Below, piece by piece: positions 6,468 through 46,738 of a DNA stretch of 64,000 bases. The notes beneath the pieces were generated by a model, which saw only the letters and a list, made by a program, of their open reading frames with translations, searched no databases and was not told the origin of the DNA. The first letter of the stretch is position 1; each line of letters opens with the position of its first letter. Source of the DNA: Cyanophora paradoxa CCMP329 (taxonomy: Eukaryota > Plantae > Glaucophyta); the NCBI GenBank assembly GCA_004431415.1, contig QPMI01000225.1:62001-126000 (forward strand), read 5' to 3'. The position numbers and the translations under genes were made by a program.

Positions 6468-9400
6468 CTAGGCAGCCGGGGGACAGCGGGCGGTGGGGAG
6501 GCGGCCCAGGGGCTCCTCCCCGCGCAGGAGCCGCTCGACGGTCTCCGCGCCGGCGCGCCGCGCGAAGGCCGCAGCGTCCCACACGGCGCCCCCGCCCCCG
6601 CCCCGCCCCGCCCCGCCCCCGCCCCGCCCCGAGCTCGGGCTGCGGCGGGGCCGGCGCCGCCACCGGCGGGCTCTCGCTCTGCCCCCTCCGATGCTCCTCC
6701 GGGGCGGCTCCGGGGGCGCAAAGCGCGGCAGGAGCTGCGCGGCGGGCAGCTGCAGGTCGACCAGGATGGCCGCCGTGGGGAGCCGTGCGGCGAGCGCGGC
6801 GAGGCAGAGCCTGCACACGACCGAGTTCGAGGGCGGCGAGCGAGCAGGGGGGGGGGGGGGGGGGGGGGGGAGGGGGGAGGGGGGGGGGGGGGGAGGGGGG
6901 CGTGTCTTCGGCCGCGCACGCGTCGAGGCCGTCCGCGCGGCGGGCGGCGGGGTCGGCGCCCTTGGAGAGCAGGAAGCGGCAGATCGACTCCCGCCCGTTG
7001 TACGCAGCGTACCTGCGCCCCAGAGGCGGCCGGTTTGGTCGGGAACGAAACGCAGCGGAACGATAGGGCTGCGCGGGGTCGCCAACATGAGCGCCGTGGT
7101 GCCGTCCGCGCGCCGCGCGTTGACGTCAGCCTGCAGAGCGATGCCGACCGATGTCGGCCCTCGAGAAGGCTAAATATAGCTAGAAATGAAAGAGCTCGAG
7201 CCCGGGAACGTAGACCTGGCAGTTGTCGGCGAGCCAGCGCACGACGTGCTCGTGGCCGCCCTGGACCCTGCCGACGCTTCAGGCCGGCCCCCCAGATTCC
7301 AAGGAGGGCCGCGGCGCTCGCGCCGGCGACTGCGCACGAAGCGATGAGGGGCGTCACTCCGTCCTGCGGGGCGGCGTGGATTCGGGCTCAGCGGCGCGGG
7401 TAGGGAGCGCGGGCCTGACCTCCGCCGCCTCCTCGACGCCGAGCCCGCAACCGACGGCGTACTGGGCAACCTGGGGAGGTCCGAGGGGCGCAGGTGGGCT
7501 CGAGGAGAGCGCGCATACACAGCCCGAGCTCGAGGTGGACCACAAGAGTGCACCGGAAGCTCTCCGCTGAGAGCGGCCGCGTGAAGAAAGGTCTGGCCAT
7601 CCTTGGTGCGGGCGCGACAGTTGGCGCCTGTGCAGGATATAGGCCGGATTAATATTGCGTCGACAGATTTCGCGAACTGTGGCAAGTGGCGCAAGCGCAC
7701 CGCGCTCAACCAGCAGCGTCGCGATCTCGAGGTACCCTTTGAACGCGGCGCAGTGCAGCTGCGCGCGCGACGGCTTGCTTGCTTGGGGGCCTGGGTCCGC
7801 TGCACGGCCCGGGGCGACGCACAGCGGTGACTCCATCCTCGCTGGCAGCGTCGAGCACAGCGCCGCCGTCGCAGAGCGCACGAACGACCTGCGGGGCCGG
7901 CGCCGTTCGGCTTCCGAAAAGGACGAAAGCCGCGCCGTTGCTTGCGACGCACGCCAATGTGTCCGAAGTTCGAAGCGAACATGAGCGGTGTGTTCCCAAT
8001 GGCTGCGGCCCGAAACGGGGCACATAAACTCAGTTGGGGCGGCGGGGGAGAGATCCAGCCGAGTGAGGTGGCAGCGGACTGCTTGCAGCATTTGGGTTGG
8101 CTCCCTGCGCACCCACACCGCAGCTGCAGTGAGCGGCGCAGGCGACGACAGGTCCTCGCTGACGGTGAGCTCGAGCGGGGCGGACCAGGCGCAGGAGGGT
8201 GGCAACGAGCTCTTGGTTCCCGTTGACCGCCGCGATGTGTAGCTGCCGAAGCGCACACGTGCATCGGTTAACGTTTGCACACTTAGAGAACAGCGCCAGG
8301 TCATGGGCTCGTCTGGGAAGGACGGCGCACAGCGGTGTTTCCGTTCTCGCTGGCCGCGTCGACAACAGCGCCGCCTTCGCAGAGCGCACGGACGACCTGC
8401 GGGGCCGTGGGGTCACAGAAGATTTCGGATGGAAGCGCGCCGGTGCGCATGCAACGCGGCGCACGCCAATGTGCCCTTCTTCCGCGGCACTCATGAGGGC
8501 CGTGATCCCTTTTCCTGCGGCCCGACCGGAAGCAAAACGAGTGAGTTTCATTGGAGTGGCTGAGGGGCAGATCTGAATGAATGCGGGGGCAGCGGACTTT
8601 TGGCAGCATTGGGGTTGGCTCCCTTCGCGCACATACATATCACAGTGAGCGGCGCAGGCGAGGGCGGACCTCCCGGCGCGGGTGGTAAGGGATCACGAGG
8701 GGACGACATCGAAGCAGACCAGGCGCAGGAGGGTGGCAACGAGCTCTTGGTTCCCTAGGACGGCCGCGACGTGCAGCTGCCGCGGTGCAGGCGTGCACAT
8801 ATCAATACACTTCATTAAGAAACCAGAGCCAAGTCTTGGGCGCGTATATGAAGGGCGACGCACAGCGGTGACTCCATCCTCGCTGGCAGCGTCGAGAACA
8901 GCGCCGCCGTCGCAGAGCGCACGAACGACCTGAAGGGCCGAGGGGTCGACGTGCCAGAAAGGTTCAGATGAGAGGCACGCTGCTGCGCATGCACGCGGCG
9001 CACGCTAAGGTGCCCTCGTCGAGCGGCAGATATGAGGGCCGTGATCCCTTCACCTGTGGCCCAACCCGTAGCGGAACGAGTGAGTTCCATCGGCGTGGCG
9101 GGGGCAGGTCTAGACGAGTGAGGTGGCAGCGGACTGTTTAAGTTCACAGCATTGGGGTCGGCTCCCTGTACGTCCACACCCAAGTGAGTGGCGCAGGCGA
9201 CGACAGGTCCTCGCTGACGGTGAGCTCGAGCGGGGCGTACCAGGCGGAGGAGGGTGGCAACGAGCTCTTGGTTCCCGTTGACCGCCGCGATGTGTAGCTG
9301 CCGAAGCGCACACGTGCATCGATTCACATTGAACCAGCGCCAAGGCATGGGCGCGTCTAGGATGGGCGGCTCACAGCGGTGATTCCGTTCTCGCTGGCCG

Positions 9401-11489
9401 CGTCGACAACAGCGCCGCCTTCGCAGAGCGCGCGGACGACCTGCGGGGCCGTGGGGTCACAGAAGAGTTCGGATGGAAGCGCGCCGGTGCGCATGCGCGC
9501 GGCGCACGCCAATGTGCCCTTCTTCCGCTGCGGCTATGAGGGCCGTGATCCCTTTTCCTGTGACCGCGGCACAGCGGGTGTGCATCAGCGTGGCTGTGGG
9601 TAGATCTAGACGAGTGAGGTGGCAGCGGACCGGTTCGAGCATTTGGGTTGGCTCCCTGCGCCCCCATGCCGCATGCGCAGTGAGCGGCGCAGGCGAGGGC
9701 GGCCCTCACGAGCGGTAAGTGAGGGGACGACGCAGACCAGGCGCAGGAGGATCTCAACGACCTCTTGGTTCCCTCGGACCGCGGCTGTGAGCAGCTGCCG
9801 CAGCGCAAACATGCGCCGGTTAACATTTGCACACTTTGATCAGGGCCAGCGCCAGGTCATGGGCTCGTCTGGGAAGGACGGCGCACAGCGGTGATTCCGT
9901 TCTCGCTGGCCGCGTCGACAACAGCGCCGCCTTCGCAGAGCGCGCGGACGACCTGCGGGGCCGTGGGGTCACAGAAGAGTTCGGATGGAAGCGCGCCGGT
10001 GCGCATGCAACGCGGCGCACGTCAATGTGCCCTTCTTCCGCAGCACTCATGAGGGCCGTGATCCCTTTTCCTGCGGCATATGATACAGCGGGGGATCGGA
10101 GGTTATCAGTACGGCGGGGATACTGTAAGAAGCTAAGTGTGATATGGCGGCGGACCCGTTCGAGCATTGGGGTTGGCTCCCTGCGCGCGCCCATGTCGCA
10201 GTGAGCGGCACAGGCGAAGTTGGATCCTAGCGGAAGGTGAGTGAGAGGCCGTCGCAGACGTGGCGCAGGAGGATCTCAACGAGCTCTTGGTTCCCTCTGA
10301 CCGCCGCGATGTGCAGCTGCCGAAGCGCACACGTGCATCGGTTAATTTTTGCGCACTTAGAGACCATGGCCAGCGCCAGGTCATGGCCATGGGCTCGTCT
10401 GGGAAGGACGGCGCACAGCGGAAATTTCATTCTCGCTGGCCGCGTCGACAACAGCGCCGCCTTCGCAGAGCGCGCGGACGACCTGCGGGGCCGTGGGATC
10501 ACAGAAGAGTTTGGATGGAGGCGCGCCGGTGCGCATGCAACGCGGCGCACGCCAATGTGCCCTTCTTCCGCTGCGCCTAGGAGGGCCGTCATCCCTTTTC
10601 CTGTGACCGCGGCACAGCGGGTGTGCATCAGCGTGGCTGTGGGTAGATCTAGACGAGTGAGGTGGCAGCGGACCGGTTCGAGCATTTGGGTTGGCTCCCT
10701 GCGCGCCCACACCGCAGCTGCAGTGAGCGGCGCAGGCGAGGGCGGACCTCCGGGGATCCCGGCGCGGGTGGTAAGTGATCATGAGGGGACAACGCAGACC
10801 AGATGCAGGAGGGTGGCAACGAGCTCTTGGTTCCCGTTGACCGCCGCGATGTGCAGCTGCCGAAGCGCACACGTGCACCGGTTCACATTGAACCAGCGCC
10901 AAGACATGGGCGCGTCTGGGAAGCTTAAGGGCGGCTCACAGCGGTGACTCCGTTCTCGCTGGCCGCGTCGACAACAGCGCCGCCTTCGCAGAGCGCACGG
11001 ACGACCTGCGGGGCCGTGGGGTCACAGAAGAGTTCGGATGGAAGCGCGCCGGTGCGCATGCACGCGGCGCACGCCAATGTGCCCTTCTTCCGCGGCACTC
11101 ATGAGGGCCGTGATCCCTTTTCCTGCGGCCCGACCGGAAGCAAAACGAGTGAGTTTCATCGGCGTGGCGGAGGGGCAGACCTAAACGGGGAAGGTGGCCT
11201 GGCAGCGGACCGGTTCGAGCATTGGGGTTGGCTCCCTGCGAGTCCATACCGCGCGCATGTGCAGTGAGAAGCGCAGGAAAAGGCCGCTCCGCGCGGGATG
11301 AGTAAAGGGCGACGCGGACCAGGCGCAGGAGGGCCATGACGGTGCCGTGCTCGCCTTTCGTTGCGGCTCTGAATTACAGGGGTCAGGCGCCGGCGCCGGC
11401 GCGGGGTCCAAAGGCAGCTGGTGGGCGCACTCGATGAGAGATCTTCCATGCATTCCCAACATGAGCATCGCTGCACTGAGAACTTCCAT
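6468..11489 (-). CDS. Ankyrin-repeat protein (about 15-18 repeats), very many small exons
   Basis: Repeating LHIAAVNGNQELVATLLRL-GANPNA / GITALMSAAEEGHIG-VVRALCEGGAVVDAASENG. C-terminal repeats ADVNARRADGTTALM and YAAYNGRESICRFLLSKGADP. ATG at 11489. Confidence 0.88.
7800..11340. repeat. Tandem array of 7 cassettes (about 510-530 bp, 4 exons and 4 introns each) inside the ankyrin gene
   Basis: The VVRALCEGG exon recurs near 7823, 8330, 8863, 9374, 9886, 10415 and 10940, and the intervening introns are alignable between copies. Confidence 0.92.
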
Positions 11490-25348: not shown

Positions 25349-28047
25349 CTACTCGAAAGTGGAGAGAGACGCGTCGAGCTCCCTGAACTGCTCGTGGAAG
25401 ACCTGGCCGGGATGCTTAGTTGGGGGGGGGGGGGGGGGGGGAAAGTGGGGCAGGGGCAGGGTGGTGGGGGGAGGGGGGTGGGGGGTGGGTTGCGGAACCT
25501 TCAGGAGCGCTATCATGTGGTCCACGTCATCTGTCCCGCAGACCTCGCGAACGCTGCCCGTCCGGCGTGAGGACGAGCGCGCGGGGTGCGAGGCGCAGCT
25601 AATCACTGATTCGAGGTAGGGCGGGAGGTCTGGGCGCGATGCAAGTTTGCGGGGCACCTGTGCATGGAGAGCTGCCCGTTGCCGATGTCGACGGTGCGCA
25701 CGCCGCAGTTCGTCGCGATGATCGGCCCGATCGTCGACCCGCACGGCATGTCGTTCCGCACCACGAAGTCCTGCCCCGAGGCCCCGCCGTGTGGGCGGGG
25801 CGGCACGCTCTCCACAGAATGTAGTGGCTGGGGGTACCTGGATCGGGATATTGTTGCGCTGCGCGAGGGTACGGATGATGAACGAGGAGACCGAGTTTGT
25901 CGCGTAGCGCTGCGGGGGCGGGCGTTAGCCGAGACGCGGGCGGGGCGGCGGGGGCGGGTCGGGGCGGGGGCGGGTGCCGTAGCGCGCCTGGTTGCCGTTG
26001 GTCTTGATGACGGGCCCGCGGTGGAGGAGCGGCCTGTGCTTGTCCTCGTGCTTGTCCGCGTAGTTCGGGTGGCACGCGTGCGCGTTGTCCGCTGCGAGGC
26101 GCAAAGCGAGGGTCATGACGGGCGGGCGGGAGGCTGCGCTGCGCGGGCGGGCGGGCGGGGGCGGGGGAGGAGGACCGGAGACGAGGAAGGAGCGGCGGCA
26201 GACGCGCTCGAAGACATCGGCCTGGGCGAGCGGGCTCGAGGAGTCGCCTAGGGTGAGCGCGAGGCGCCGGAGCGTCTCCTGGAGCAGCGAGCTCCCGGCC
26301 CCGTGCGTCGAGCAGGAGCCGACCTCCTCGTGGTCGAAGAGCGCGATCAGGCGCACGTCCTCGTCCTCCGGCACCGTCGGCAGCGTCTCCACGAAGCTCT
26401 CCAGCGCGCAGAAGCACGAGAGCAGGTTGTCGATGCGCGCCGAAAAGATGAACTCGCGGAAGACGCCTCCGATGACCGCCGGCTGCGTGTCGCACACCGA
26501 CAGTTCAAAGTCCATGATGTCCGCCGCTGCGGGCCGGCGGGGCGGGTCGGCCGGGGCGGGAGGGGGGGCGCGGCGGCGCAGGGGGCGGCGCGGAGGGCGG
26601 CGCGGGGGGCCGGCGGGAGGGCGGTGTAACGCACGCTCGCACTTGAGCTCGTCGGCGAGGAGCCGGAGCAGCGCGGGATGGTGCCGCGACTCGTCCGCGT
26701 CCTTCTCCAGCTGCCTGCGGCGGCGCTCGGCGCTGCCCCGGGCCGGCGCCAGCGCGCACGGGCGGACGCGGCGTACCCCTTGATCGCCGTGGAGAGGATA
26801 GGCAGGAGGTGCGTCTGCTTGTTCACCTGCGGGGGGCGTGAGAGGCGCGCCGCCGGCGGCGGCAGCAGCTGAAGAGAGAGACAGACCTTAAAGCCCTCGT
26901 TGACCTCGCGGTCAAGGTGGATCGCAAGCGACGAGATGCGCATGATCGGACGCTCGATGTGCACCAGCCTACCGGCAGCCGGTCGGCAGGGCGTAGGGCG
27001 CTGCGCGGGCGCGGGCACACCTGTGCTCAAAGCGGTCCGGTCCGCCTTCCGGGGTGCGGGTGCTGACGATAACGCGGCCGGCGACGGTGAGATCGCTGCG
27101 AGCACGGTCAAAAAAGAGGAGAAAGGAAGGAACAGGAAGAGCGCACCGGTCGAACCAGGTGTACCAGAGGCCGCCGCCGTACGTCTCAACGCCGACCTGC
27201 ATGTAGCCGTTCTTCGATACCGCCGAAATGGGCTTGACCTGCGGGCGCGTGGTCGTCGGGCCGCCATGAGCGCGTGCGGAGGGGGCGTTGAGCTACCTTG
27301 AGGTTCGGACTGTCGGTGTGCGCGGCGACCATCTTCACGCCGTTGCCCGGCTTCTGCAAAGGGACACGCAGCTTAGGGAGCGCGTGGCCAGCTCGCACTC
27401 GCGCGCACATATTTGCCGCCAACTGTGAAGGCGCAGATGGTGCTCTGATTGCGTGTGAAGAAGTAGCGGCCGCCGGGCTGCAGATTCCAGTGGTCCGCCT
27501 CCGAAATGGGCTCGAAACCGTTCTCGAGCAATCTCCTGCGGCACAGGTCTGCGCCCGATCGTGTCACGGCCAAGCGGTGATTCGCGCAAGGGAGACAGGA
27601 CGAATCGCACCGACGGCGTGGAAGGGAGAGGGACAAGCGTTGACGAAGTTCACGAAATCGACGGCTCGCTGCGGGTCGGCGTCCCGCTGCACGTCCCAAT
27701 CAATCAAAGTCACGAGTCCGCGGGAGGAGCGGCACGCGCGAGCGCACGACAGGTTTGGGTGCCGGCGGGGCCGTCGGCGTGTCCAGCGGCGTGCTGGGGG
27801 CCGGGGCCGGCTCGCTAGAGTTGAAAAGTCGGAAGGCGCCCCTTTGCGGCGGCGCTCGCCTCGCCGCTGCTCCGGATAACTCAGGGACGGCTTCGCCGAA
27901 GAAATGGCGCCGATGTGCAGTAAGCTGCGAGCGCGCCGCCCGTGGAGCGCAGCATGCTCGTGCCTGGCGCAACGCTGATCTGAAGATCGGCGCGCTGATT
28001 CGGCCAGTCACGTTGATGATAGAAGAGGCAAACGCCGCAGGCTCCAT
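25349..28047 (-). CDS. DNPEP: Aspartyl aminopeptidase (peptidase M18) with N-terminal extension
   Basis: [67 protein letters not shown] and [10 protein letters not shown]. Confidence 0.95.
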
Positions 28048-28266
28048 CCCTGCAGAGACCACGGCGCTCCTTTTTTTCACGAGCCTGGGTACGGCAGGCT
28101 ATTTTTCTTTTGCGCCTCGCACTACGGACAGGCGAGGCTTGGAGGAGTTAGCAGCGCATTGTCAAGGACTCAGCGCATCGCCGCTGGTCGCGCGTCGGGA
28201 CAGCACCCGCCGCCGCCCACGGCGCCGCCGGAAGCGGCACAGTTGTTAAAGACAGGCGGGCCTGGT

Positions 28267-31074
28267 ATGGCCAGGCAACCAACGCCTGGTCATGGCGACG
28301 AGCACGGCGGGCAGCTCGACCCCATTCGCTCCTCGCCGACTGGGCCCGTCGGCAAATGCGGAGTGTGCACGAAGAAGAAGAGCATGCGCGAGCTTTCTTC
28401 ATTGGATTCCGGAATTGGTAAGCAAGCACCGTGGCGCTCTGCGATTGCACTGCCGCTGATTATGAACCCTTCAGAGCAAAATCTTAGGCGTCGCTGGGGC
28501 GCGCTGTACAAGTCGCGAGGCTCGAAGATCTGCACTGTCTGCAAGGCCGACATCTGCGCGTGGGCCGTGTCTGCGAAGGCGAACGTGCGCGAAGCTTCCA
28601 ATCGCGAGCGTCTTCGGTGCTGCTGCACCGTCATCCGCTTATTCACGCCTGCTCGCAGTCCCCATTCAAAGATGTTAACGAGCGGGCGCGAGCGGGTCAA
28701 GCGCGGCGCGAACGGGACAAGCGCTTCGCCAATACAATCGATGAAGACCTGGAAACCTTTAGAAACGGCCTAGACATCGGGTCTCCCCCGGTGCGCAGCC
28801 TGCTTTCTTTCCTTGTAATTGTAGCTAACGAGTGCGCCTCTGGAAGAACCCGGAGGCGCTTCCGGAGGCGCACGACCGGAGGCGGCGTGAGCCGGCACCC
28901 TCGCAGCCGGCCCAAGTGCGGCTGCCTGAAGGTGCGCCGAACTTCGCGACAGCAGTATCGCCTTCACGAGTTCCAGAGCCACACGGCGTGGAGGGGCCGC
29001 GAATTTTCACTCATCCCCGCCGCGCAGATGTGCGGAGCTGGAGCCAGGAGGATGTCGCCGCCTTCTTGAACAACCTGCGGTTGACGCAGTACCGCGACAA
29101 GTTCGCGGAGCAGGCCATCGACGGAGATCTTCTCCTGGAGATCCGGTTCGCTCGGCCGGCTCGCTGCGCCGCTCCCGGTCCGCCGGCTGACACAGACCGG
29201 CCGCTCGCTCGCAGGGAGAAGCACTTAAAGGAGGAGTTCCAAATACGGGACAGCTTCCACGTAAAGAAGCTCGTGAAGGCGATCGAGAACCTGCGGGACA
29301 AGTGCCCGCCCGCGCCGCCACCGGCGAACGGGCAGATCTTCAGGTTCGACGAGGACCACGACGTCGTCCAACGCCCGACGGACCGGCCCACGGACAAGCT
29401 AATCGGCGCGAACGCGATGTGGTGCGCCGGGCCGCTTCTCTCCTCGTCTTTCTCCGAGCGGGGGCCGACGCGGGGGCGCCGCAGGAAGATAAACTTCAAG
29501 GAGATCGCGCTGGGTGAGCGCATCGGCAGCGGGAGCTTCGGGGAGGTGCGGGTGGGGACGTGGAAGGGCCTCGAGGTCGCCGTCCCCACCCGCACCTCCC
29601 CGAAGCTCCCGCTGCCTGGTCCTTAAGCCACACGCCTGGTCCTCAGGTCGCCGTCAAGATCCTTAAAGACCAGGATCTCAACGAGGAGATGACGAACACG
29701 TTCAGCTCCGAGGTCTCCTTGATGCGCAAGCTCAGCCACCCCAATGTCGTCCAGCTCCTCGGCGCCTGCTGCGAGCCGCCCAACCTCGCCATCGGTGCGC
29801 CGCCTCCGCTCTGCTCTGCCGCGCTCCGCTCCGGGCCGGCCCGCTGAGCTTCGGCCGGAACGCGCAGTGACGCCGCTGCACCGGAAGGGATCCCTCTTCC
29901 GCGTGCTGCACCGCGTGCGCATCGACCTCTCGTGGCACAGGCGGGTCTGCATGGCCATTGACGGTAACTCTTGCTTGCTCCCCCCTTCTCCCCTCTTTTC
30001 CTTTCCGTGCGGTCTGACGCGCCGCTCCCCGCGCCGGCAGTCGCCCTCGGGATGACCTACCTGCATTCCATGCGCGTCTGCCACCGCGACCTCAAGTCGG
30101 CGAACTGCCTCGTGGACGTGCGCCTTTCCTCTCTCCTCTCTCTGTTCTTCCCCCCGCCCACCCGCCCGCCCGCCCGCCGGCCCACGCCGCGCCGCCTCCG
30201 CAGAAGCACAACGCGGTGCGCGTGGGGGACTTCGGCTTCTCTCGCGTCAAGACAACCACCATGGACAAGTTCCAGACGCAGGCCGGTGCGCCGCCAGCGA
30301 GGATCGGAACAGTTGGAGGGGGCGGGCCCTCTGACCTCGCGCGACCCACGCAGGCACTTACGCGTACATGGCGCCGGAGGTGCTGAGGAACGAGCCCTAC
30401 AACGAGTCGGCCGACGTCTTCAGGTAAAGCTTGCTTATCAGCCTTGTCCCTTGGCAGCGAAGTAACCAAAAGAAAACAGCTTCGGCGTGGTGCTATGGGA
30501 ACTGCTAAAACGGGAGGAGCCCTTCCACTGTGCGGCCCGCCCGCCCCCCGCCCGCGCGCCCAGGTCGGCGGCGGTCCCCCGTCCTCCCCTCACGGGCGCC
30601 CCTGCAGGGATGTCGCCCTACGCGATCCCCTTCTTCATCTCCTCGGGAAACCGGCTGCCGGTGCCGGACGAGAACCCCGAGCAGCTCGCGGCCTTCGGCT
30701 CCTACCGCGAGCTGCTGCTCTCGTGCTGGCACGAGGAGCCCGCGGCGCGCCCCTCCTTCGAGGTCATCCTCGAGCGCCTCAAGCAGATCGCCTCGGAGAT
30801 CAAGCGCGCCGCCGCGGCCGCCGCCGGGGGGCCCCCTTCCCCGGCCGCCGCCGCCGCCATCCCCGCCCAGCACCCGGCCGTCGCCCACGGGCGCACGCCC
30901 TCCTCGGCCGCCCTCAACGGCCTGCAGCCGGCCATCCCCGGCGCCGGCTTCGAGTTCCCCGCCCCGCCCGCCGACGCCCCGGCCGCGGCAGCGGCGGCGC
31001 TCGCGCCCCACGCCAACGGGGCCAACGGGGCCCGGAGCGTGCGGGCGGCGCCTCAGGAGGGCGGGGCGGGGTGA
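28267..31074 (+). CDS. Tyrosine-kinase-like (Raf-like) kinase with a SAM domain and N-terminal CxxC/CxxC pairs
   Basis: SAM: WSQEDVAAFL..LTQYRDKFAEQAIDGDLLL. Kinase: GSGSFG, VAVK, HRDLKSAN, DFG, GTYAYMAPE, DVFSFGVVLWE. N-terminal CGVC...CTVC. Confidence 0.93.
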
Positions 31075-31595
31075 GCGCGGCCGCCCCGCGCGATCGACAG
31101 GCCGTTCGTCTTTCGCCTTTCGCTTTCGGCGGTTTGGATCTGTTTCGGCACAGCTTGGGCCTCGGCGGCAGCATGCCAGGCCGCGGTGGCACGCACCAGG
31201 CGGCCCCGCGAAATACAACAGTCAGGGCGGCGCGCCCGCCGCCCCTCGGGCGGCGGTGCGTGCCGCCGGTGGCGCTCCGCGGCGGCGGACAGGGCCCGGG
31301 CGGGGCCGCGAGCTCCGCGGCTAGCCGCCCGCAGGCCCCCTGCCTCCCCCGCGGCGCGCGTGTGCTCCACTGAGTCCATCCAATTTTGCGTCACATCACT
31401 CTCTCCCGCTCTATATCCACCTCCCTTGGAGTCCTTGTCGTTGTTCTTTAGGTTCTGGTTACTATTCTTTGCAGACAGCTCTTTCAAATTAAATGTTTCA
31501 TCAGTACGAGGATGCACTCACTACGCGCAATACTTTACGCAAAGAACGAAACATATAGAGCGACAGGAAAAAGCGGCGCCGAGGGCTAGACCTTT

Positions 31596-34063
31596 CTAGA
31601 GGTTGTAGGACCTGCGGAGCTGCAGGGGCTGCGCCTGCGGCTGCAGGAGCTTGGACTTGTTCGCGGCGTCGCCCTCCTTCTCCTTCTCCCGCAGCTTCGC
31701 GGCGGCGGCGGCGGCGGCGTTCTCCTTGTCGGCGCCGCGGGCGGAGACGGGCTCCATGGAGCTCGTGCGGTGCAGGGCGAAGGGCCACTCGCGGTGCGGC
31801 ACGGCGACGCTCTCCGGGGGGGCCCCCGCCGGCCCCGGGCCCCTCTCCATCTGCTTCACCTGCGCCCCCGTCAGAAGGAGCCGCCCCGGCGGGAGGGCGG
31901 AGGGAGGCGGGAAGGGCGCTCGCCCGGGCGCGGACGGCGCTGGTGGGGCGCGAGGGCCGCGGCGGGGCGGGGACCTCGATCTCGCGGGGCAGCGGCGGGG
32001 GCGGCGAGGCGCTGCGGGAGCCCGGAAGGGAGCGCGCGGTGGAGGGGCCCGAGGAGGCGACCAGGCCCGCCTGCGGGGCACGCTCGCCCCCCAAGCGAAC
32101 GGCGCGGGGGAGGGGCGCACGGAGAGGGCGATCTCGAAGAGGGGCAGGTGGACGCTGCTCAGGCGCTGGCTGAGGGAGCGGTTCTCGGCCTCGAGGGCGA
32201 CGACGCGGGCGCGGAGCAGGTCGAGCTCCGAGGCCGCCGCCGCCTCCGCCTCCTCCGCCACCTCCAGCAGCGAGCGCCGCATCTCCCGGCAGTCCGCCGC
32301 CAGCGCGTCCACCTTGCGCACGCAGCGAGCTCGGCGCGGGGCGAGGGGGTTGCGGGGCTGGGGGGCGGGCCACCTGGGCGCGGATGTCGCCGGCGGGGGC
32401 GGCGTCCTTGAGGGGCGAGGCGGAGGGCGAGGGGGCCTGCATGGAGACCTGCGCCGGCGTCGGCGGGGGCGGCGCGGGGCGCCCGGGGGGCACAGGCGGA
32501 CGTCGCGGGTCTCGGCGGCCCCGCGGCCGCTCTGCCCGCCAGCCGCCGCGAGCGCCGCGTCCGAGCTGACGTTGAGGCTGTCGATCTGCACCCGCAGCTC
32601 CTCTGCGGGGGACCGTCCGCCGCGCAGAGGCGGAGCGAGGGGCCGGCCCCGCGCACCGATCTTCCGGTCGCTGGCGGCGAGCTTCTCCTTGAGCTCGCGG
32701 AGCTGGCGGGCCTGGGAGGCCTCCTTGCCAGGCGAGGCGGCGGCGGGGGCGGCGGCGAGGGCGGCGGCGGCGGAGAGGCGGGCCCTGAGGAGCTCGGCCT
32801 CGCGCCGCGCGGCGTCGCGCTCCTCCTCGAGCGCCCCGCACGCCTCCGCCAGCTCCTGTACGACTGTCTGCACGTAACCCAGCGAGCGCAGCAGCCGCCC
32901 CGGCGACGGCGTCCGCTCCGCCCCGGCCGGGCTCAGCTCCAGCAGGAGGGCCGGCGGCGCCGCCGCCGGCGTGCTCTCGCAGCCGGCCACGGCGCCGGGG
33001 AGGGGTCGGCCCGGGCTGACGCAGATGGGGCAGGGCTCGCCGGGGGGCGGGGGCGAGGCGGAGCAGTAGGAGCAGGAGGGGGAGGGGGGAGGGGGCGCCC
33101 CCGAGCGCGCGCTGGGCGAGAGGAGCACGTGCGTCGTCTGCGCGCTGCTGGCGCTGCCGGGCGGCCCCGCGGAGAGGGGCGAGCTCGCCCGGATCGAGTC
33201 GACCAGCTCCGAGAGGCGCGCGATGGCGGCCTGGGCCCGCGCGGCGCTCGAGCCCGGCCGCGGGGGCGTGCGCGGCGCCTGCTCGCCCCCGGTCGCGCTC
33301 TCCCCCGCGCGCTTGGAGAGCTCCTCGTTCTCCTGCACGACGACCTGCGCGGCGGTGGGCGGGAGCCGGGCGCGGCGGGGCGCGGCGCCGAGGCGGACGG
33401 CGAGGGCGTCCTTGGCGGCGTCGGCCTGGTCGCGCTGCTGCCTCAGCGCGGCCTGCAGCTGCGCCTGCGCCTCCTCCAGCTGCGTGATGCGCTGCGTGAG
33501 CTCCGCGTTGTGGTCCGCCAGCCGGTTGCGCGAGGTCCGCAGGTCGCTCCACATCTGGAAGAGCGCCAGCATCTCGCTCGATTGCTCGCTGGCGCGGCGA
33601 AGCCCGCGCGGTCAGGAGAAGGCGGCAGGGACGCGCGATGGGCGTGCATACCTCCGCGCCTCGTCCAGCTGCTCGCCGACCTGGGTCTGCTGGTTGTCCC
33701 GCAGGCAAGTGCGCGGCGTGAAGAGCACGCGCGACAGGGACTGGCCCCTCTTCGACTTCCTGCAGAGATCTGCAGCGTTCGGCGGTCACGCCTCTGCGAG
33801 GGAGCGAGCGGGGGCGAACGAGGCTCGCCCTGATAGGTCTCATGCAGCACGAGAAGAATATCCTCGCGGGAGATGAGCCGCAGGATTTTCAGAGCGAAGT
33901 CCGCGTCGTCGGGGTGGTTGACCTGCGCCCGCCGGCGCGCGGTCAGCTGCGGCGCGCCATCCAAGTGCGGCAGCACATGCAGACGCACCCAGCTCATGTT
34001 CGGGACGCGCATGTTGGGCCGGAGGCGCGAGCGGCGGTCGCTCGCTGCTGCCGATTCTGTCAT
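31596..34063 (-). CDS. Uncharacterised coiled-coil protein
   Basis: In-frame splicing from ATG 34063 (..VPNMSW-VNHPDDADFALKIL..-DLCRKSKRGQSLSRVLFTPRTCLRDNQ..) into the 658-aa ORF, which has heptad-rich segments. Confidence 0.7.
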
Positions 34064-35153
34064 CGGGCGCACACGCTATGGCTTTGCAACGCTAGCTGAT
34101 TTGTGTACTATTCGGACGCGCTGGCGCTGGGCGCGGCTTGCGAAAACTGATGAGCACCCGTTGTGGTTTGAACCCGATTGAGCATTGTACCCGTCAGCTA
34201 GTTGCGGCTAGCGTCGGCTTGCCTTGCTTTCTCGCGACGAGCTCCGCGAGGCAGGTGAGCAGGGCGCTCGGGGTTCGCGATCTCGCATCTAGGTGCCGCG
34301 TTTGGCCGGTTTCCATGCTGACGTTCGGTCCGAGGCATCCGACCGCCGCCAACCGCCGTAGCAAGGCAAGCGGGCGCGCGGAGGCGTTGGGGTGCGTGAT
34401 CCTGCACCTTGGTGTTGTGTTTGGCCGATCAGGGCGCAGTTCAAAAGGAGATCTAGATTCGTGCTGAACGCCGTGCGTGGGACCCGAGCGTTCCGCGGCA
34501 GATCCACCGTAGGAAAGAGCTATAGAAGGCCACGAAAGCGCTAAAAAGCGTCCGGTGCGCTTTCTCGCCCCGGCCCCCTGTGTCAAAACCGGCCGCGGCC
34601 GCGGCCGGCCCGGCCCGCGCGGCCGCGCGGCCGCGGCCAACGTTAACCCGACCGTGTACATTTTCAGTGCACGTGGCGCGCAAGCTTAAGCCAGCTAGCG
34701 TGCTCCGGAGTTCGGATCCAAGCTCGAGCATCCGGGCCCGCGTCTAGATCTGCATGCGCAGCTGCATGTACATGTACATATGCATGTGCATGCATGTGAT
34801 CATGAGCTTGCAATTGCCCGCCGCTAGCTGTAGCGGACCAGCATCTCCGAATATGCATACAGCTGCAGCCAGAGGCCGCTTGCACGACATGTACAGCTGC
34901 AGCCCGTCGCCATTTGCATTCAAGGCCTAGATCGATGTCTAGATCCGCAGTTGCAGCTGCAGCTTGCTGCACAGATATGCCGCGTTGGCCACGCGCTCGG
35001 CCACTGAGGCCGCACGCGTATACGTAATCTCCGCTGATCATGACAAGCGTGCATGCGGTACGCGTACACATACGTATACATGCAACCGGACGCTGGCTAA
35101 TCATTTGAATTTTAACGGTTTACGCGCATCAAAATAACAGCTGGCAGAGTGCC

Positions 35154-35224
35154 CTCTGCGAACATGTACGTGTTACGCGGTTTAGCGGTTTACGCGCACC
35201 AGTAACACGTACATGTTCGCAGAG
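35154..35224. repeat. Perfect 23-bp inverted repeat with a 25-nt spacer
   Basis: CTCTGCGAACATGTACGTGTTAC (35154-35176) pairs with GTAACACGTACATGTTCGCAGAG (35202-35224). Confidence 0.95.
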
Positions 35225-35434
35225 TGCATGATCAACGTTAACGCCGCCGTGCTCCAGCGCTACCCCCCCTTCTCATGCGCTACCCCCCGAGGAAGCTCCC
35301 GAGAAAATGACAAATCTTGAGGTATCTTATCTCTGGATATGCTAGAGATACGTATACGAGCGCGCCGTTAAAGCAGACGACGCGTTTCTCAGCGAATTCG
35401 CACACGACTGCGGCCAACGCGCAACTCTTCTGGA

Positions 35435-44749: not shown

Positions 44750-46738
44750 AAGTATACGCCATGGCGGTTCGGTCTCCGCCTGTGAAGCGAATTAAAAGAC
44801 CAGCGGAGGAGGAATGAGGATTTATATCGTCGCGAAGAGGGGTGTGGTCCCTGCGACGTGGTGGCGGATACTTGTAATTTTCAGCTGCACTTCTCAAGTT
44901 GTGGGTGGAGCGGTGGCAGCTGCAGCTTCGCGGTGCTGGACTGCGCGCACCTGCGACAGCGACGGCCTTTCTTCTGACATTGAAGGTCTGGATTGACCGT
45001 GACTTGATTATGATCATGACCAGGAGCTTGGTCTGGTCGGACTTCGAATTCGTGAATTTGTACAATTTGGAGAAGGCGTCGCTCCGATCCGGTGAACCGG
45101 CGTTCACGACCGAGGCGCGGACCTGCCCATGCCCTGGCCAGGATGGGAAGAACCCAGGAGGGCGCTGTGGACAGTCGTGAGCGGGACTCCGGGAGGACAA
45201 CCGTGGAGGGCGGGATGCCCGAAGTCTCGCTCGAGGCGCGGACCTGCTCGTGACAGGAGGCCTAGGGCGCTCAGGACAGCATTGGACCGGTTGACACCCA
45301 ACCGACGAGACCGGAATCGGCCCTGCATCAGACGGACGCGAGCTCAGCGTTATCGTCGCCGCGGGGTTACTACACTCAAGTCAAGCGTGTCTCGACGCGG
45401 CGTCGTCGAGATGCAGTCCGTCTCGGGAGGAGCGGGCTTGACTGACAAGAAATTTAAACAGGACGACAAGGCATGCATATGCGCACCTCCCATGGTCGGA
45501 TGGAACCGGCCTTTGTCGTTCTCGGAATCAAGGAGGGGACTTGGTTGAGACTGGACACCGTCTCGCCTCAGGTGGAGCGGGGGACGCCCTTAACCATCTG
45601 TTGGCTATGGAGACTGGACACCGTCTCCCTCGTGCTCCTGACCCGGCGGAGGATAGAGCATCCCCGGCGGACCTTCTGGGTCTTCGGACTCGACGTGCAA
45701 CTGCACCTACCGCCGGCGGGCACACAGCAACCGTCACCTTAGCTGTGCGTCCGGCCGCAATTTAATGCTCGGGTCGAACGGCGGAGGATCTTGTCAGGCG
45801 GTTCGGAAATTACGAGCGGAAATTTTGGAAGTACTCATCGCGGCGGCGCCCGCGTTTGGATGTACAGGGCTTCCTCGTTTTTTTCGCCGTCTACAGATTC
45901 AGACGCAGGCCGGAGGGGCCAGACTTCGCCGACGTTGAAGGAGCAGCGGCGTCTGCAAGGCCAACGTCCACGGCAAGTCCACGAGGGCGCTGTCATTCCC
46001 AAATCAAGACTGCCCCTCGTCGAGAGAGTCGTGCTGGCGATGCTGGTTCAAGCATGGCCGCACCTTGCAGCGACCTCTCATTATACATACTTGCGTTTCT
46101 CGCATTTGCAACGCGTATGTATGCAGCTGTCGGCGTTCTTCATGGCACCCGCTGCTGGAGCTCGAAGCATTTGTACAAATCGTGTACATATCAGCCGCAG
46201 CGCGCGGCGAGTAAGCCAAGCAGCAGTACGCAGCTTGAGCTGTTCGATTTCCGATCGATACATCGATATTCTTATTTTAGAATATTGATCGTGATCGCGA
46301 TTTCATATCGTTGAGTTTAGCTTGTACATGAGCTTCGAAAATATTTTCTGAGCTCTAGATGTGAAGCTTTAGTTATATTCTGCCAGTTTCTGATTTTCTC
46401 TGATTTAGGTAGTGCAGCCTTCGCGCTGCTAGATTTAGTGCAGCCTTCGTGCTGCTAGGGCCGTCAGGGCGTTAGAACGCCTCGGCCACTTTTCATTATA
46501 TATACACGTCTTCTGAATTTCGCACGCAGGCATTTCCGAGGTTCTCAGAGGGCTTTACTTTTGCAGCCTTCAGTGTCGGATTTCGTATCCATATATATTT
46601 TCTGGCCTGACCTCTTCGTGGTACTGAGGTTTCAGGACCTGATTTACGTTTACATATGCTAGGCCTCGCATTTTGCTGCGACGAACGTCACGGGCGGGGT
46701 AGCAGGCGCCGAGGACGGCTTTTCTCTGCTGCGACGAA

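What the first reader, a model, noticed from the sequence alone, without database searches (positions are those of the whole stretch)
29525..29674. An intron assembled from inverted copies of its own flanking exons
Seen: the 71-nt kinase intron (29576-29646) contains a perfect 36-bp reverse complement (29581-29616) of the upstream exon segment encoding GSGSFGEVRVGT (29525-29560). It also has a 12/13 reverse complement (29615-29627) of downstream exon 29662-29674. Both splice junctions carry the same 11-bp AGGTCGCCGTC. Known: junction direct repeats are associated with intron gain by break repair. Inference: a very recent intron born by multi-step template switching. The 36-bp stem would loop out the 5' splice site in the pre-mRNA.
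Basis: partly seen in the sequence, partly recalled or inferred. Interest (0 to 1): 0.85.

Follow-up and report, generated by a model that had tools for sequence, protein, structure and literature searches.

The report
Young intron copied from own exons
A 71-base intron in a kinase gene of the alga Cyanophora paradoxa is really spliced out, and 64 of its 71 bases are copies of the coding sequence on either side, most of them backwards, so it looks like an intron caught soon after DNA repair or replication slippage made it.

Summary
**Observation: confirmed.**
- The 36/36 inverted repeat (29525-29560 / 29581-29616) is the longest clean inverted repeat in the 64-kb window.
- The 11-bp AGGTCGCCGTC sits at both junctions.
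- A 12/13 inverted copy of the next exon and a 10-nt internal direct repeat fill most of the rest. In all, 64 of 71 intron bases trace to sequence within 50 nt.

**Splicing and gene.**
- Transcript contigs from three studies skip exactly these 71 nt, along with the other GT-AG introns of the gene. None covers the intron.
- DNA unitigs break exactly where a k=31 graph must break at such arms, and they support the structure.
- The gene is the public Cyanophora paradoxa model tig00000981_g5878, a SAM-domain Raf-like kinase.

**Signs of a young intron.**
- The donor GTCGCC is atypical; 7 of the 12 introns examined use GTGCGC.
- The one mismatch falls on a synonymous Lys third base.

**Best reading (about 0.7).** This is a young intron made by fold-back or template-switch synthesis, plus an 11-bp junction duplication that supplied both splice sites.

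**Not proven.**
- No intron-less relative could be obtained.
- Four green-lineage homologues lack this exact position, but land plants have an intron one codon upstream.

First-stage notes flag similar patchwork introns elsewhere in this genome. I did not check them.

The parts
28267..31071 (+). Coding range of the host gene: a SAM-domain plus Raf-like (TKL) protein kinase of 627 aa in 14 coding exons. It is the public model tig00000981_g5878.t1 of Cyanophora paradoxa.
   Evidence: P0001 is 99% identical to the window ORF and is named by EukProt. All of its residues map to window exons. Pfam finds kinase and SAM domains on single exons.
29485..29575 (+). Exon 7 (91 nt), encoding KINFKEIALGERIGSGSFGEVRVGTWKGLE, the kinase glycine-rich loop.
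   Evidence: Transcript joints; intron list; mapping to P0001.
29525..29560 (+). Exonic arm, the template: 36 nt encoding GSGSFGEVRVGT.
29561..29580 (+). 20-nt spacer between the arms, the loop of the pre-mRNA hairpin. It contains the 5' splice site GAG|GTCGC (29575|29576).
29574..29584 (+). Junction direct repeat, copy 1: AGGTCGCCGTC. Its GT is the donor.
   Evidence: junction ambiguity of 11 nt.
29576..29646 (+). The 71-nt GT-AG intron, phase 0, between Glu298 and Val299. The donor GTCGCC is atypical. If the intron were retained, an in-frame TAA at 29624-29626 would end translation.
   Evidence: Skipped in one contig in each of three transcript runs, with no contig covering it. Donor comparison. 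Read-through translation.
29581..29616 (+). Intronic arm: a perfect reverse complement of 29525-29560. Its first 4 nt (CGTC) are shared with junction repeat copy 1.
29615..29627 (+). 12/13 reverse complement of downstream exon 29662-29674. It overlaps the arm by 2 nt (CC).
   Evidence: (p about 0.007).
29628..29633 (+). CCACAC: six bases with no convincing local template. With C29644 these are the only 7 of 71 bases unaccounted for.
29634..29643 (+). Second copy of the internal direct repeat GCCTGGTCCT (first copy 29614-29623).
29645..29655 (+). Junction direct repeat, copy 2: AGGTCGCCGTC. Its AG is the acceptor.
29647..29794 (+). Exon 8, beginning VAVKILKDQDL (VAVK holds the catalytic lysine). 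It contains the downstream template 29662-29674, with the synonymous mismatch at 29667.

Best explanation
This is a genuine, efficiently spliced and evolutionarily young spliceosomal intron. It was created when 71 nt were added inside a formerly continuous kinase exon at an AG|GT site.

**Inferred sequence of events**
1. A break or a stalled fork occurred at ...AGGTCGCCGTC.
2. The free 3' end (...CGTC) folded back and paired with GACG 20 nt upstream on its own strand. It was extended for 32 nt, writing an inverted copy of the glycine-loop codons.
3. After dissociation it re-primed through 2 nt (CC) and copied about 11 more nt, inverted, from the exon just downstream.
4. A few untemplated bases and a re-copy of 10 nt followed.
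5. Synthesis then resumed on the original template 11 nt behind the point of departure (or an 11-nt stagger was filled in). This duplicated AGGTCGCCGTC.

**Why it splices.** Each copy of that 11-mer contains AG|GT. The first copy therefore supplies the donor GT and the second the acceptor AG, so splicing removes exactly the added 71 nt and restores the reading frame.

**What is shown and what is inferred.** Shown: the sequence anatomy, its presence in DNA, its removal from mRNA and the restored protein. Inferred: the polarity (a gain), the order of steps and the enzymes. No function is required. The 36-bp exon-intron stem is a by-product that leaves the donor exposed in its loop.
For: - **Anatomy.**
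  - 64 of 71 intron bases are direct or inverted copies of sequence within 50 nt.
  - There is 4-nt and 2-nt microhomology at the joins.
  - No leftover 'old intron' sequence remains at either end.
- **Source of the copies.** They come from conserved kinase motifs (GxGxxG, VAVK), so the exon is the source and not the reverse.
- **Junction repeat.** 11 bp here, against 0-3 nt at the gene's other joints.
- **Donor.** GTCGCC is simply the Val-Ala codons and departs from the GTGCGC used by 7 of the 12 introns examined.
- **Mismatch.** The only mismatch is a synonymous third base. The intron preserves the preferred codon AAG (28:4 in this gene), as expected if the copy records the older state.
- **Splicing.**
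  - One contig in each of three transcript runs from three studies skips the 71 nt together with the other GT-AG introns.
  - Depth in the bin spanning the intron equals the exonic share times contig depth, so no unspliced contig exists.
- **Protein.** Public protein P0001 reads GLE|VAVK without an indel, as does the orthologue-like P0002.
- **DNA.** 14 runs hold 0.99-1.00 of the words. Unitigs 27400-29554, 29531-29610, 29581-29616 and 29587-30542 break exactly where a k=31 graph must break at 36-nt arms.
- **Known mechanism.**
  - Fold-back inverted insertions of 5-34 bp primed by microhomology occur at breaks (PMC11724301).
  - Snap-back synthesis and repeated priming by Pol theta are described (PMC5068794).
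  - Daphnia neointrons carry 4-12 bp junction repeats and internal repeats (PMC4202315).
- **Lineage context.** Cyanophora averages 9.2 short introns per gene, and bacteria-derived genes there carry 13-27 introns, so gain is ongoing or recent (PMC6704402).
Against: - No intron-less allele, strain or close orthologue was seen, so the gain is inferred and not observed.
- Selaginella and Marchantia homologues have a phase-0 intron one codon upstream, so an old intron near this site is not excluded.
- Perfect 36/36 identity could in principle be kept by selection on the stem and not by youth.
- The 13-mer is only moderately significant, and one control intron has a comparable match.
- The DNA runs may be the source of the assembly, so they are not fully independent. 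Depth over the hairpin unitigs is low (7.9 and 24.5 against 50-60). I read this as hairpin bias in short reads, but did not show it.
- The run type 'RNA' is the tool's guess. It is backed here only by the spliced contigs themselves.
Confidence: 0.7

Rival explanations
1. The intron position is old, and only its content is new. A later template-switch or fold-back event inside a pre-existing intron overwrote its sequence.
For: Land-plant homologues have a phase-0 intron 3 nt upstream in the alignment. Notes from this scan, and a six-fold excess of X-rc(X)-X 9-mers in this window, suggest fold-back micro-insertions are common in this genome.
Against: - Nothing of an older intron is left. Base 1 to base 9 of the intron is a copy of the next exon, and only CAG remains at the 3' end.
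- The consensus donor GTGCGC is missing.
- The 11-bp repeat that straddles both junctions has no explanation under this reading.
- The plant position is not the same position, and 0 of 8 Cyanophora kinase-domain introns coincide exactly with green homologues. Three near misses is close to the roughly one expected by chance, which I calculated by hand.
Confidence: 0.12
2. A two-step gain through a transposon. An element with a 9-11 bp target duplication (Mutator-like) inserted at AGGTCGCCGTC and later excised, and the gap between the two retained duplications was closed with templated filler.
For: This explains without a staggered break why both ends keep the 11-mer. Earlier follow-up notes in this scan read the genome's small palindromic scars as excision footprints (unchecked).
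Against: - No element remnant or terminal inverted repeat is present.
- The filler has no other copy in the window.
- The 20-nt spacer between the arms argues for microhomology-primed fold-back, not opening of a hairpin-capped end.
- I did not identify any element with an 11-bp duplication.
Confidence: 0.1
3. The segment is not spliced. It is a fresh disabling insertion, and the 'splice' in cDNA is reverse transcriptase jumping between the two 11-nt repeats across a very stable hairpin, or the RNA comes from a culture that lacks the insertion.
For: Direct repeats flanking strong structure are the classic setting for such artefacts (my own knowledge, not retrieved here). The junction is ambiguous over 11 nt.
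Against: - Three runs from three studies give only the skipped form, with no contig over the intron. An artefact would be a minority product.
- The only register allowed is a canonical GT-AG.
- The public gene model, built with RNA evidence, has the same junction.
- All 14 DNA runs of the same organism label hold the sequence.
Confidence: 0.03
4. The exon-intron hairpin is kept by selection as a working element, for example a small-RNA precursor aimed at the kinase's own glycine-loop codons or a splicing throttle.
For: A perfect 36-bp stem of -93.6 kcal/mol. Many miRNA-precursor models give sub-threshold hits. This parallels the inverted-duplication model for new plant MIRNA genes (paper listed; I saw only its title and the start of its abstract).
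Against: - All Rfam hits lie far below the gathering scores and occur on both strands, the generic response to any long hairpin.
- There is no conservation data.
- There is no small-RNA evidence.
- Youth explains the perfect identity more simply.
Confidence: 0.05

Closest known systems
Neointrons of Daphnia pulex attributed to double-strand-break repair (Li et al. 2009; Li et al. 2014, PMC4202315)
   Same: - Short introns (mean 78 nt there, 71 here) that are cleanly spliced.
- Direct repeats of 4-12 bp of the adjacent exon at the opposite end (11 bp here).
- Frequent internal direct repeats (10 nt here).
- In-frame stops.
   Different: In Daphnia the inserted DNA is AT-rich and of unknown source, gain is proven by presence/absence polymorphism, and that paper's text never mentions reverse-complement matches to exons. 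Here nearly every base has a named local template, mostly inverted, but polymorphism is not available.
Fold-back (snap-back) templated inverted insertions at DNA breaks: yeast Pol delta plus end joining (PMC11724301); Pol theta-mediated end joining with repeated priming (PMC5068794)
   Same: - Inverted copy of flank sequence lying tens of bases from the break.
- Priming by a few bases of microhomology through a hairpin loop (41 nt in yeast, 20 nt here).
- Tracts of 5-34 nt or more than 20 nt.
- Several templated pieces in one insert.
- Error-prone copying.
   Different: Those are experimental repair scars, usually with deletions. None was described as creating a spliced intron. The responsible enzyme in Cyanophora is unknown.
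Intron creation by tandem duplication of an AGGT-containing exon segment (Rogers model; reviewed in PMC3443670)
   Same: A duplicated AGGT provides both splice sites, so splicing restores the original message exactly.
   Different: In that model the whole intron is a direct tandem copy of exon sequence. Here only 11 bp are tandemly duplicated, and the interior is inverted filler.
Introners and other transposon-derived introns (PMC9860276, PMC12130899)
   Same: The insertion carries or creates its own splice sites, and a target duplication can be co-opted.
   Different: Introners are multi-copy families with their own sequence. This intron's sequence is local and single-copy in the window.
Short template-switch mutations in the four-point model (Loytynoja and Goldman 2017; from my own knowledge, not retrieved here)
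   Same: One switch to the complementary template and a return upstream of the departure point gives exactly 'duplicate - inverted copy - duplicate'.
   Different: That model was described for mutation clusters and small hairpins in primate genomes, not for the birth of an intron.

Membership tests
U2-type spliceosomal intron | GT...AG boundaries | tested here: met
   GTCGCC...CTCAG. This is the only GT-AG register within the 11-nt ambiguity.
U2-type spliceosomal intron | Removed from mature RNA with the reading frame restored | tested here: met
   Skipped in one contig in each of three transcript runs from three studies. P0001 reads GLE|VAVK.
U2-type spliceosomal intron | Branch point and pyrimidine tract typical of the host | tested here: inconclusive
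   Only CTTAAG or CACAC are candidates, and there is no clear CTRAC such as several neighbouring introns have.
Break-repair neointron (Daphnia type) | Direct repeat of the adjacent exon end at the opposite intron end (4-12 bp) | tested here: met
   11 bp, AGGTCGCCGTC; range taken from PMC4202315.
Break-repair neointron (Daphnia type) | Absent from sister alleles or close relatives | not testable with these tools
   - All 14 DNA runs are near-identical.
- The ORF search and the metagenome scan found nothing.
- P0002 is a transcript.
- Distant homologues do not share the exact position.
Fold-back / template-switch templated insertion | Insert is the reverse complement of nearby flank, with microhomology at the junctions | tested here: met
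   36-nt and 13-nt inverted copies with templates within 50 nt, and 4-nt and 2-nt overlaps.
Fold-back / template-switch templated insertion | Dependence on a given polymerase or pathway (Pol theta, or Pol delta plus end joining) | not testable with these tools
   This needs genetics in Cyanophora.
Tandem-duplication (AGGT) intron | Intron body is a direct tandem copy of exon sequence | tested here: not met
   Only the first 9 intron bases are a direct copy of the next exon's start (part of the 11-bp junction repeat). The body is inverted.
Introner / transposon-derived intron | Member of a multi-copy sequence family with element ends | tested here: not met
   No second copy of the non-exonic part in 64 kb, and no terminal inverted repeats. 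The whole genome was not searchable.
microRNA precursor / mirtron | Match to a curated family at its gathering score, or small RNAs from the arms | tested here: not met
   Best hit 53.6 bits against a gathering score of 78, with dozens of unrelated models on both strands. Small-RNA data were not available.

The most novel reading that the evidence does not exclude
Cyanophora's very high intron density (9.2 per gene, even in bacteria-derived genes) is being built largely by repair- or replication-templated filler inserted at AG|GT sites, not by introner transposons. This kinase intron would be the clearest single example. It would also be the first spliceosomal intron whose birth can be read almost base by base as fold-back copying of its own exons. 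As a by-product it forms a perfect exon-intron hairpin that could seed a self-targeting small RNA.
Probability: 0.3. Interest if true: 0.85.

Novelty: new variant of a known kind. Interest (0 to 1): 0.62.

Why it matters
How new spliceosomal introns arise is a long-standing open question. Break repair is a leading model, but a 2012 review (PMC3443670) counted only five unambiguous cases and no in vivo demonstration. In Daphnia, the best-studied population, the source of the inserted DNA is unknown.

Here a spliced intron keeps a nearly complete record of its own making. It shows a junction duplication that supplies both splice sites, two inverted copies of the flanking exons joined through microhomology, and an unoptimised donor. 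That links intron birth directly to fold-back or template-switch synthesis, a process so far studied as a mutational scar in yeast, worms and tumours.

It also points to a concrete genome-wide test in an intron-rich, little-studied lineage. And it shows that a 36-bp exon-intron stem around the donor does not prevent splicing.

Tried and rejected
- **Assembly artefact: rejected.** Short-read unitigs reproduce arm, loop and arm with no differences.
- **Introner or repeat family: rejected within the window.** No second copy of the filler.
- **Known RNA family: rejected.** Rfam gives only generic sub-threshold hairpin hits on both strands.
- **Search for an intron-less allele or relative.**
  - The 264-aa read-through ORF found nothing among 5.8 billion proteins.
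  - The exact look-up of P0001 found no contig.
  - The metagenome scan with P0001 found no relative.
  - P0002, the only orthologue-like protein, lies on a 1.9-kb intron-free transcript contig.
- **Paralogue comparison: not possible.** No close Cyanophora paralogue appears among the best 120 homologues.
- **Distant homologues.**
  - The exact position is not shared.
  - None of the 8 kinase-domain introns is shared either, so the test has little power.
- **Tandem-duplication origin: rejected.** The intron body is inverted.
- **Literature.** I found no paper linking intron gain with inverted copies of flanking exons. The library is not complete.
- **Searching rules.**
  - No exon-joined model of my own was sent to any search tool.
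  - Full-length searches used the public protein P0001.
  - Single exons or ORFs were given by reference.
  - Scripts checked only a few codons on either side of each exon junction.
Full report
**What is in the sequence**

- The arms 29525-29560 and 29581-29616 are 36/36 complementary, with 20 nt between them.
- AGGTCGCCGTC stands at 29574-29584 and again at 29645-29655.
- 29615-29627 is a 12/13 reverse complement of 29662-29674.
- The 36-nt pair is the longest clean inverted repeat within 300 nt in the whole 64-kb window. The other top entries are GC-rich or CAG low-complexity tracts.

I added several details.
- A 10-nt internal direct repeat, GCCTGGTCCT, lies at 29614-23 and 29634-43.
- The intronic arm shares its first four bases (CGTC) with the first junction repeat.
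- The two inverted pieces share two bases (CC).

Counted base by base, 64 of the 71 intron bases are direct or inverted copies of sequence lying within 50 nt. Only CCACAC (29628-33) and C29644 have no template.

**Controls**
- The other 11 introns of the same gene have longest exact inverted matches to their flanking 120 nt of 5-9 nt, against 36 here.
- The 13-mer is weaker evidence. 36 of 5000 shuffles of the remaining intron reach it.
- One control intron (28791-28846) ends in a 14/15 inverted copy of exon 28859-28873. That may be chance, or an older event of the same kind.

**The gene and the organism**
- Single exons hit the kinase and SAM domain families.
- An exhaustive profile search with the read-through ORF returned one protein at 99% identity over four stretches, P0001 of 627 aa.
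- Its source names it EP00741_Cyanophora_paradoxa_P006060, model tig00000981_g5878.t1.
- All of its residues map to 14 exons between 28267 and 31071.
- The window's 67.4% G+C and the 56-96-nt introns fit the published genome: 67.6% G+C, 9.2 introns per gene, mean intron 86 bp, probably haploid (PMC6704402).
- Across the junction P0001 reads GTWKGLE|VAVKILK. P0002, the only orthologue-like protein, reads GSWNGLE|VAIKVLR without any indel.

**Is it spliced, and is it in the DNA?**

*Transcripts.*
- Fourteen DNA-type runs hold 0.99-1.00 of the sampled words. Six transcript-like runs hold 0.27-0.59, as expected for exons only.
- I laid one DNA run and three transcript-like runs from three studies on 27400-32400.
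- Each transcript run has one long contig (3162, 3718 and 1859 nt). It joins 29573 to 29645, skipping 71 nt with GT..AG ends and 11 ambiguous bases.
- The same contig also skips the gene's other GT-AG introns of 56-96 nt.
- These consecutive canonical joints show that the runs are transcript-derived, whatever their record says.
- In all three runs the depth of the bin 29571-29737 equals the contig depth times the exonic share of the bin (15.2, 18.1 and 12.0). No contig therefore covers the intron.

*DNA.*
- The DNA run has no such joint.
- Its unitigs end at 29554, span 29531-29610, cover 29581-29616 and restart at 29587. A k=31 graph must break at exactly these points on 36-nt perfect arms, and all show zero differences.
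- Their depth is low (7.9 for the loop, 24.5 for the shared arm) against 50-60 beside them.
- I read this as poor short-read recovery of a strong hairpin. An intron-less allele would have raised the arm depth and produced a joint contig.
- The DNA runs may be the source of the assembly, so this is not fully independent support.

**Signs of youth**
- The donor is GTCGCC, which is simply the Val-Ala codons. Seven of the 12 introns examined begin GTGCGC, and none of the others has C at position 3.
- The one mismatch between the 13-mer and its exon template is exon base 29667, the third base of Lys AAA. The intron copy implies AAG.
- This gene uses AAG 28 times and AAA 4 times, with a third-position G+C of 0.88.
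- The simplest reading is that the intron recorded the older, preferred codon and the exon later took a synonymous G-to-A change. A copying error is the alternative.
- If the intron were retained it would shift the frame and give TAA at 29624-29626.

**RNA structure**
- The hairpin 29525-29616 folds at -93.6 kcal/mol.
- In 217 nt of context the fold has z = -10.6 against shuffles. The 36-bp stem is intact, and GAG|GUCGC lies in the 20-nt loop.
- A second, weaker stem pairs the intron's CCUGGUCC with the downstream exon around the acceptor.
- Splicing evidently copes with this. The donor is single-stranded in the loop.
- Rfam gives only sub-threshold hits of dozens of unrelated miRNA-precursor models on both strands, the generic answer to any long hairpin.

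**How it most likely arose**

The anatomy is 'duplicate - inverted copy of upstream flank - inverted copy of downstream flank - short extras - duplicate'.
- **Replication route.** One switch of a growing 3' end onto its own or the complementary strand, followed by a return 11 nt behind the departure point, yields exactly this.
- **Break route.** Equally, a 3' tail ending in CGTC can fold back onto GACG 20 nt upstream, be extended, dissociate, re-prime and finally be joined, with an 11-nt stagger filled in.
- **Precedents.**
  - Yeast breaks acquire 5-34-bp (up to 150-bp) inverted copies of the flank through a microhomology-primed hairpin with a 41-nt loop (PMC11724301).
  - Pol theta scars in C. 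elegans show snap-back copies in reverse-complement orientation, tracts over 20 nt, repeated priming and frequent errors (PMC5068794).
- I cannot tell the replication route from the break route, nor name the enzyme.
- The 20-nt spacer argues against opening of a hairpin-capped end, which would give a spacer-less palindrome.
- Because AG|GT lies inside the duplicated 11-mer, the insertion came with a donor and an acceptor in the one register that restores the message.

**Gain, or an old intron with replaced content?**

I could not obtain an intron-less relative, and there is no close paralogue.
- None has an intron between the residues aligned with Glu298 and Val299.
- Coccomyxa and Myrmecia have none nearby.
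- Selaginella and Marchantia have a phase-0 intron one codon upstream (GT|EVAVK and GS|DVAVK).
- Over the kinase domain, 0 of 8 Cyanophora introns coincide exactly with any green homologue, while the green homologues share positions among themselves.
- Three Cyanophora introns lie 2-5 nt from a plant intron. My hand calculation expects about one such near miss by chance (binomial p about 0.09).

The strict refuting condition is therefore not met, but the test has little power.

The stronger argument is internal. An older intron would have had to be erased to its first and last base, lose the consensus donor, and acquire a 9-nt copy of the next exon at its 5' end.

**Comparison with what is known**
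- Break-repair neointrons of Daphnia share the size, clean splicing, 4-12-bp junction repeats and internal repeats. Their filler is of unknown origin, and that paper never mentions reverse-complement matches (PMC4202315).
- Reviews list break repair among seven proposed mechanisms, with few unambiguous cases (PMC3443670; PMC3296678).
- Full-text searches combining intron gain with filler DNA, templated insertion, template switch, fold-back, inverted duplication or inverted repeat found no paper describing an intron made of inverted copies of its own exons. A search for Cyanophora with intron gain found none on how introns are gained there. The library is incomplete.
- I therefore class this as a new variant of a known kind.

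**Context from this scan (unchecked leads)**
- First-stage notes, and in places follow-up agents, report on other pieces of this genome a spliced intron made of plastid DNA, a PARP intron described as a patchwork of its flanking exons, twin introns sharing a copied end, and introns with duplicated junctions.
- They also report genome-wide X-rc(X)-X micro-insertions.
- In my own window such 9-mers number 345, against about 56 in second-order Markov simulations. One of seven private indels between the ankyrin-like cassettes is AAG to AAG-CTT-AAG.
- These fit an active fold-back process but are not evidence for this intron.

- No exon-joined model of mine was sent to any search. Full-length searches used the public protein P0001, and window pieces were given by reference.

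**Verdict**

Confidence is about 0.95 that this is a real, spliced intron and about 0.7 that it is a recent gain by templated local synthesis.

Noticed in passing
window 28832-28873 (+): The last 15 nt of intron 28791-28846 (GTGCGCCTCTGGAAG) are a 14/15 reverse complement of exon 28859-28873, 12 nt downstream of the acceptor. The exon there also carries CCGGAGGCG three times (28850, 28862, 28876). This may be an older, smaller event of the same kind in the same gene.
   Followed up: partly
window 45111-45247 (-): A 16-nt direct repeat, GCAGGTCCGCGCCTCG, flanks a 121-nt segment that would read GT...AG on the minus strand. It has the same junction-duplication layout as the kinase intron and lies in a region that first-stage notes assign to an LTR element. 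Splicing was not checked.
   Followed up: no
window 35150-35228: An inverted repeat of 27 nt (96%) with a 25-nt spacer in a low-GC intergenic stretch. It is the next clean inverted repeat in the window after the kinase one.
   Followed up: no
window 8128-11264: Six tandem cassettes of about 520 nt. Five of seven private indels between them are exactly 6 nt, and one is AAG to AAG-CTT-AAG. Window-wide, X-rc(X)-X 9-mers number 345 against about 56 in Markov simulations.
   Followed up: partly
window 29531-29616: Short-read DNA unitigs over the hairpin have depth 7.9 (loop) and 24.5 (shared arm), against 50-60 on both sides. This is probably hairpin bias in library preparation or sequencing, but it was not shown.
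   Followed up: partly
window 29422-30560 versus L002, L004, L003, L005: None of the 8 kinase-domain introns of the Cyanophora gene is at exactly the same position as any intron of four green-lineage Raf-like homologues. Three of them lie only 2-5 nt from a land-plant intron.
   Followed up: yes
window 31858-32120 and 27548-27748: The transcript contigs run on from 31858 to 32120, about 0.8 kb past the stop codon, which suggests a 3'-UTR intron or a shared or overlapping transcript. Two CT..AC joints at 27548/27611 and 27686/27748 mark a minus-strand neighbour gene.
   Followed up: no
window 30800-31720: Many loose ends and odd joints in both DNA and transcript contigs (for example 30827 to 31698) fall in GC-rich alanine/proline-coding low-complexity sequence. 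They look like graph tangles and not biology.
   Followed up: no
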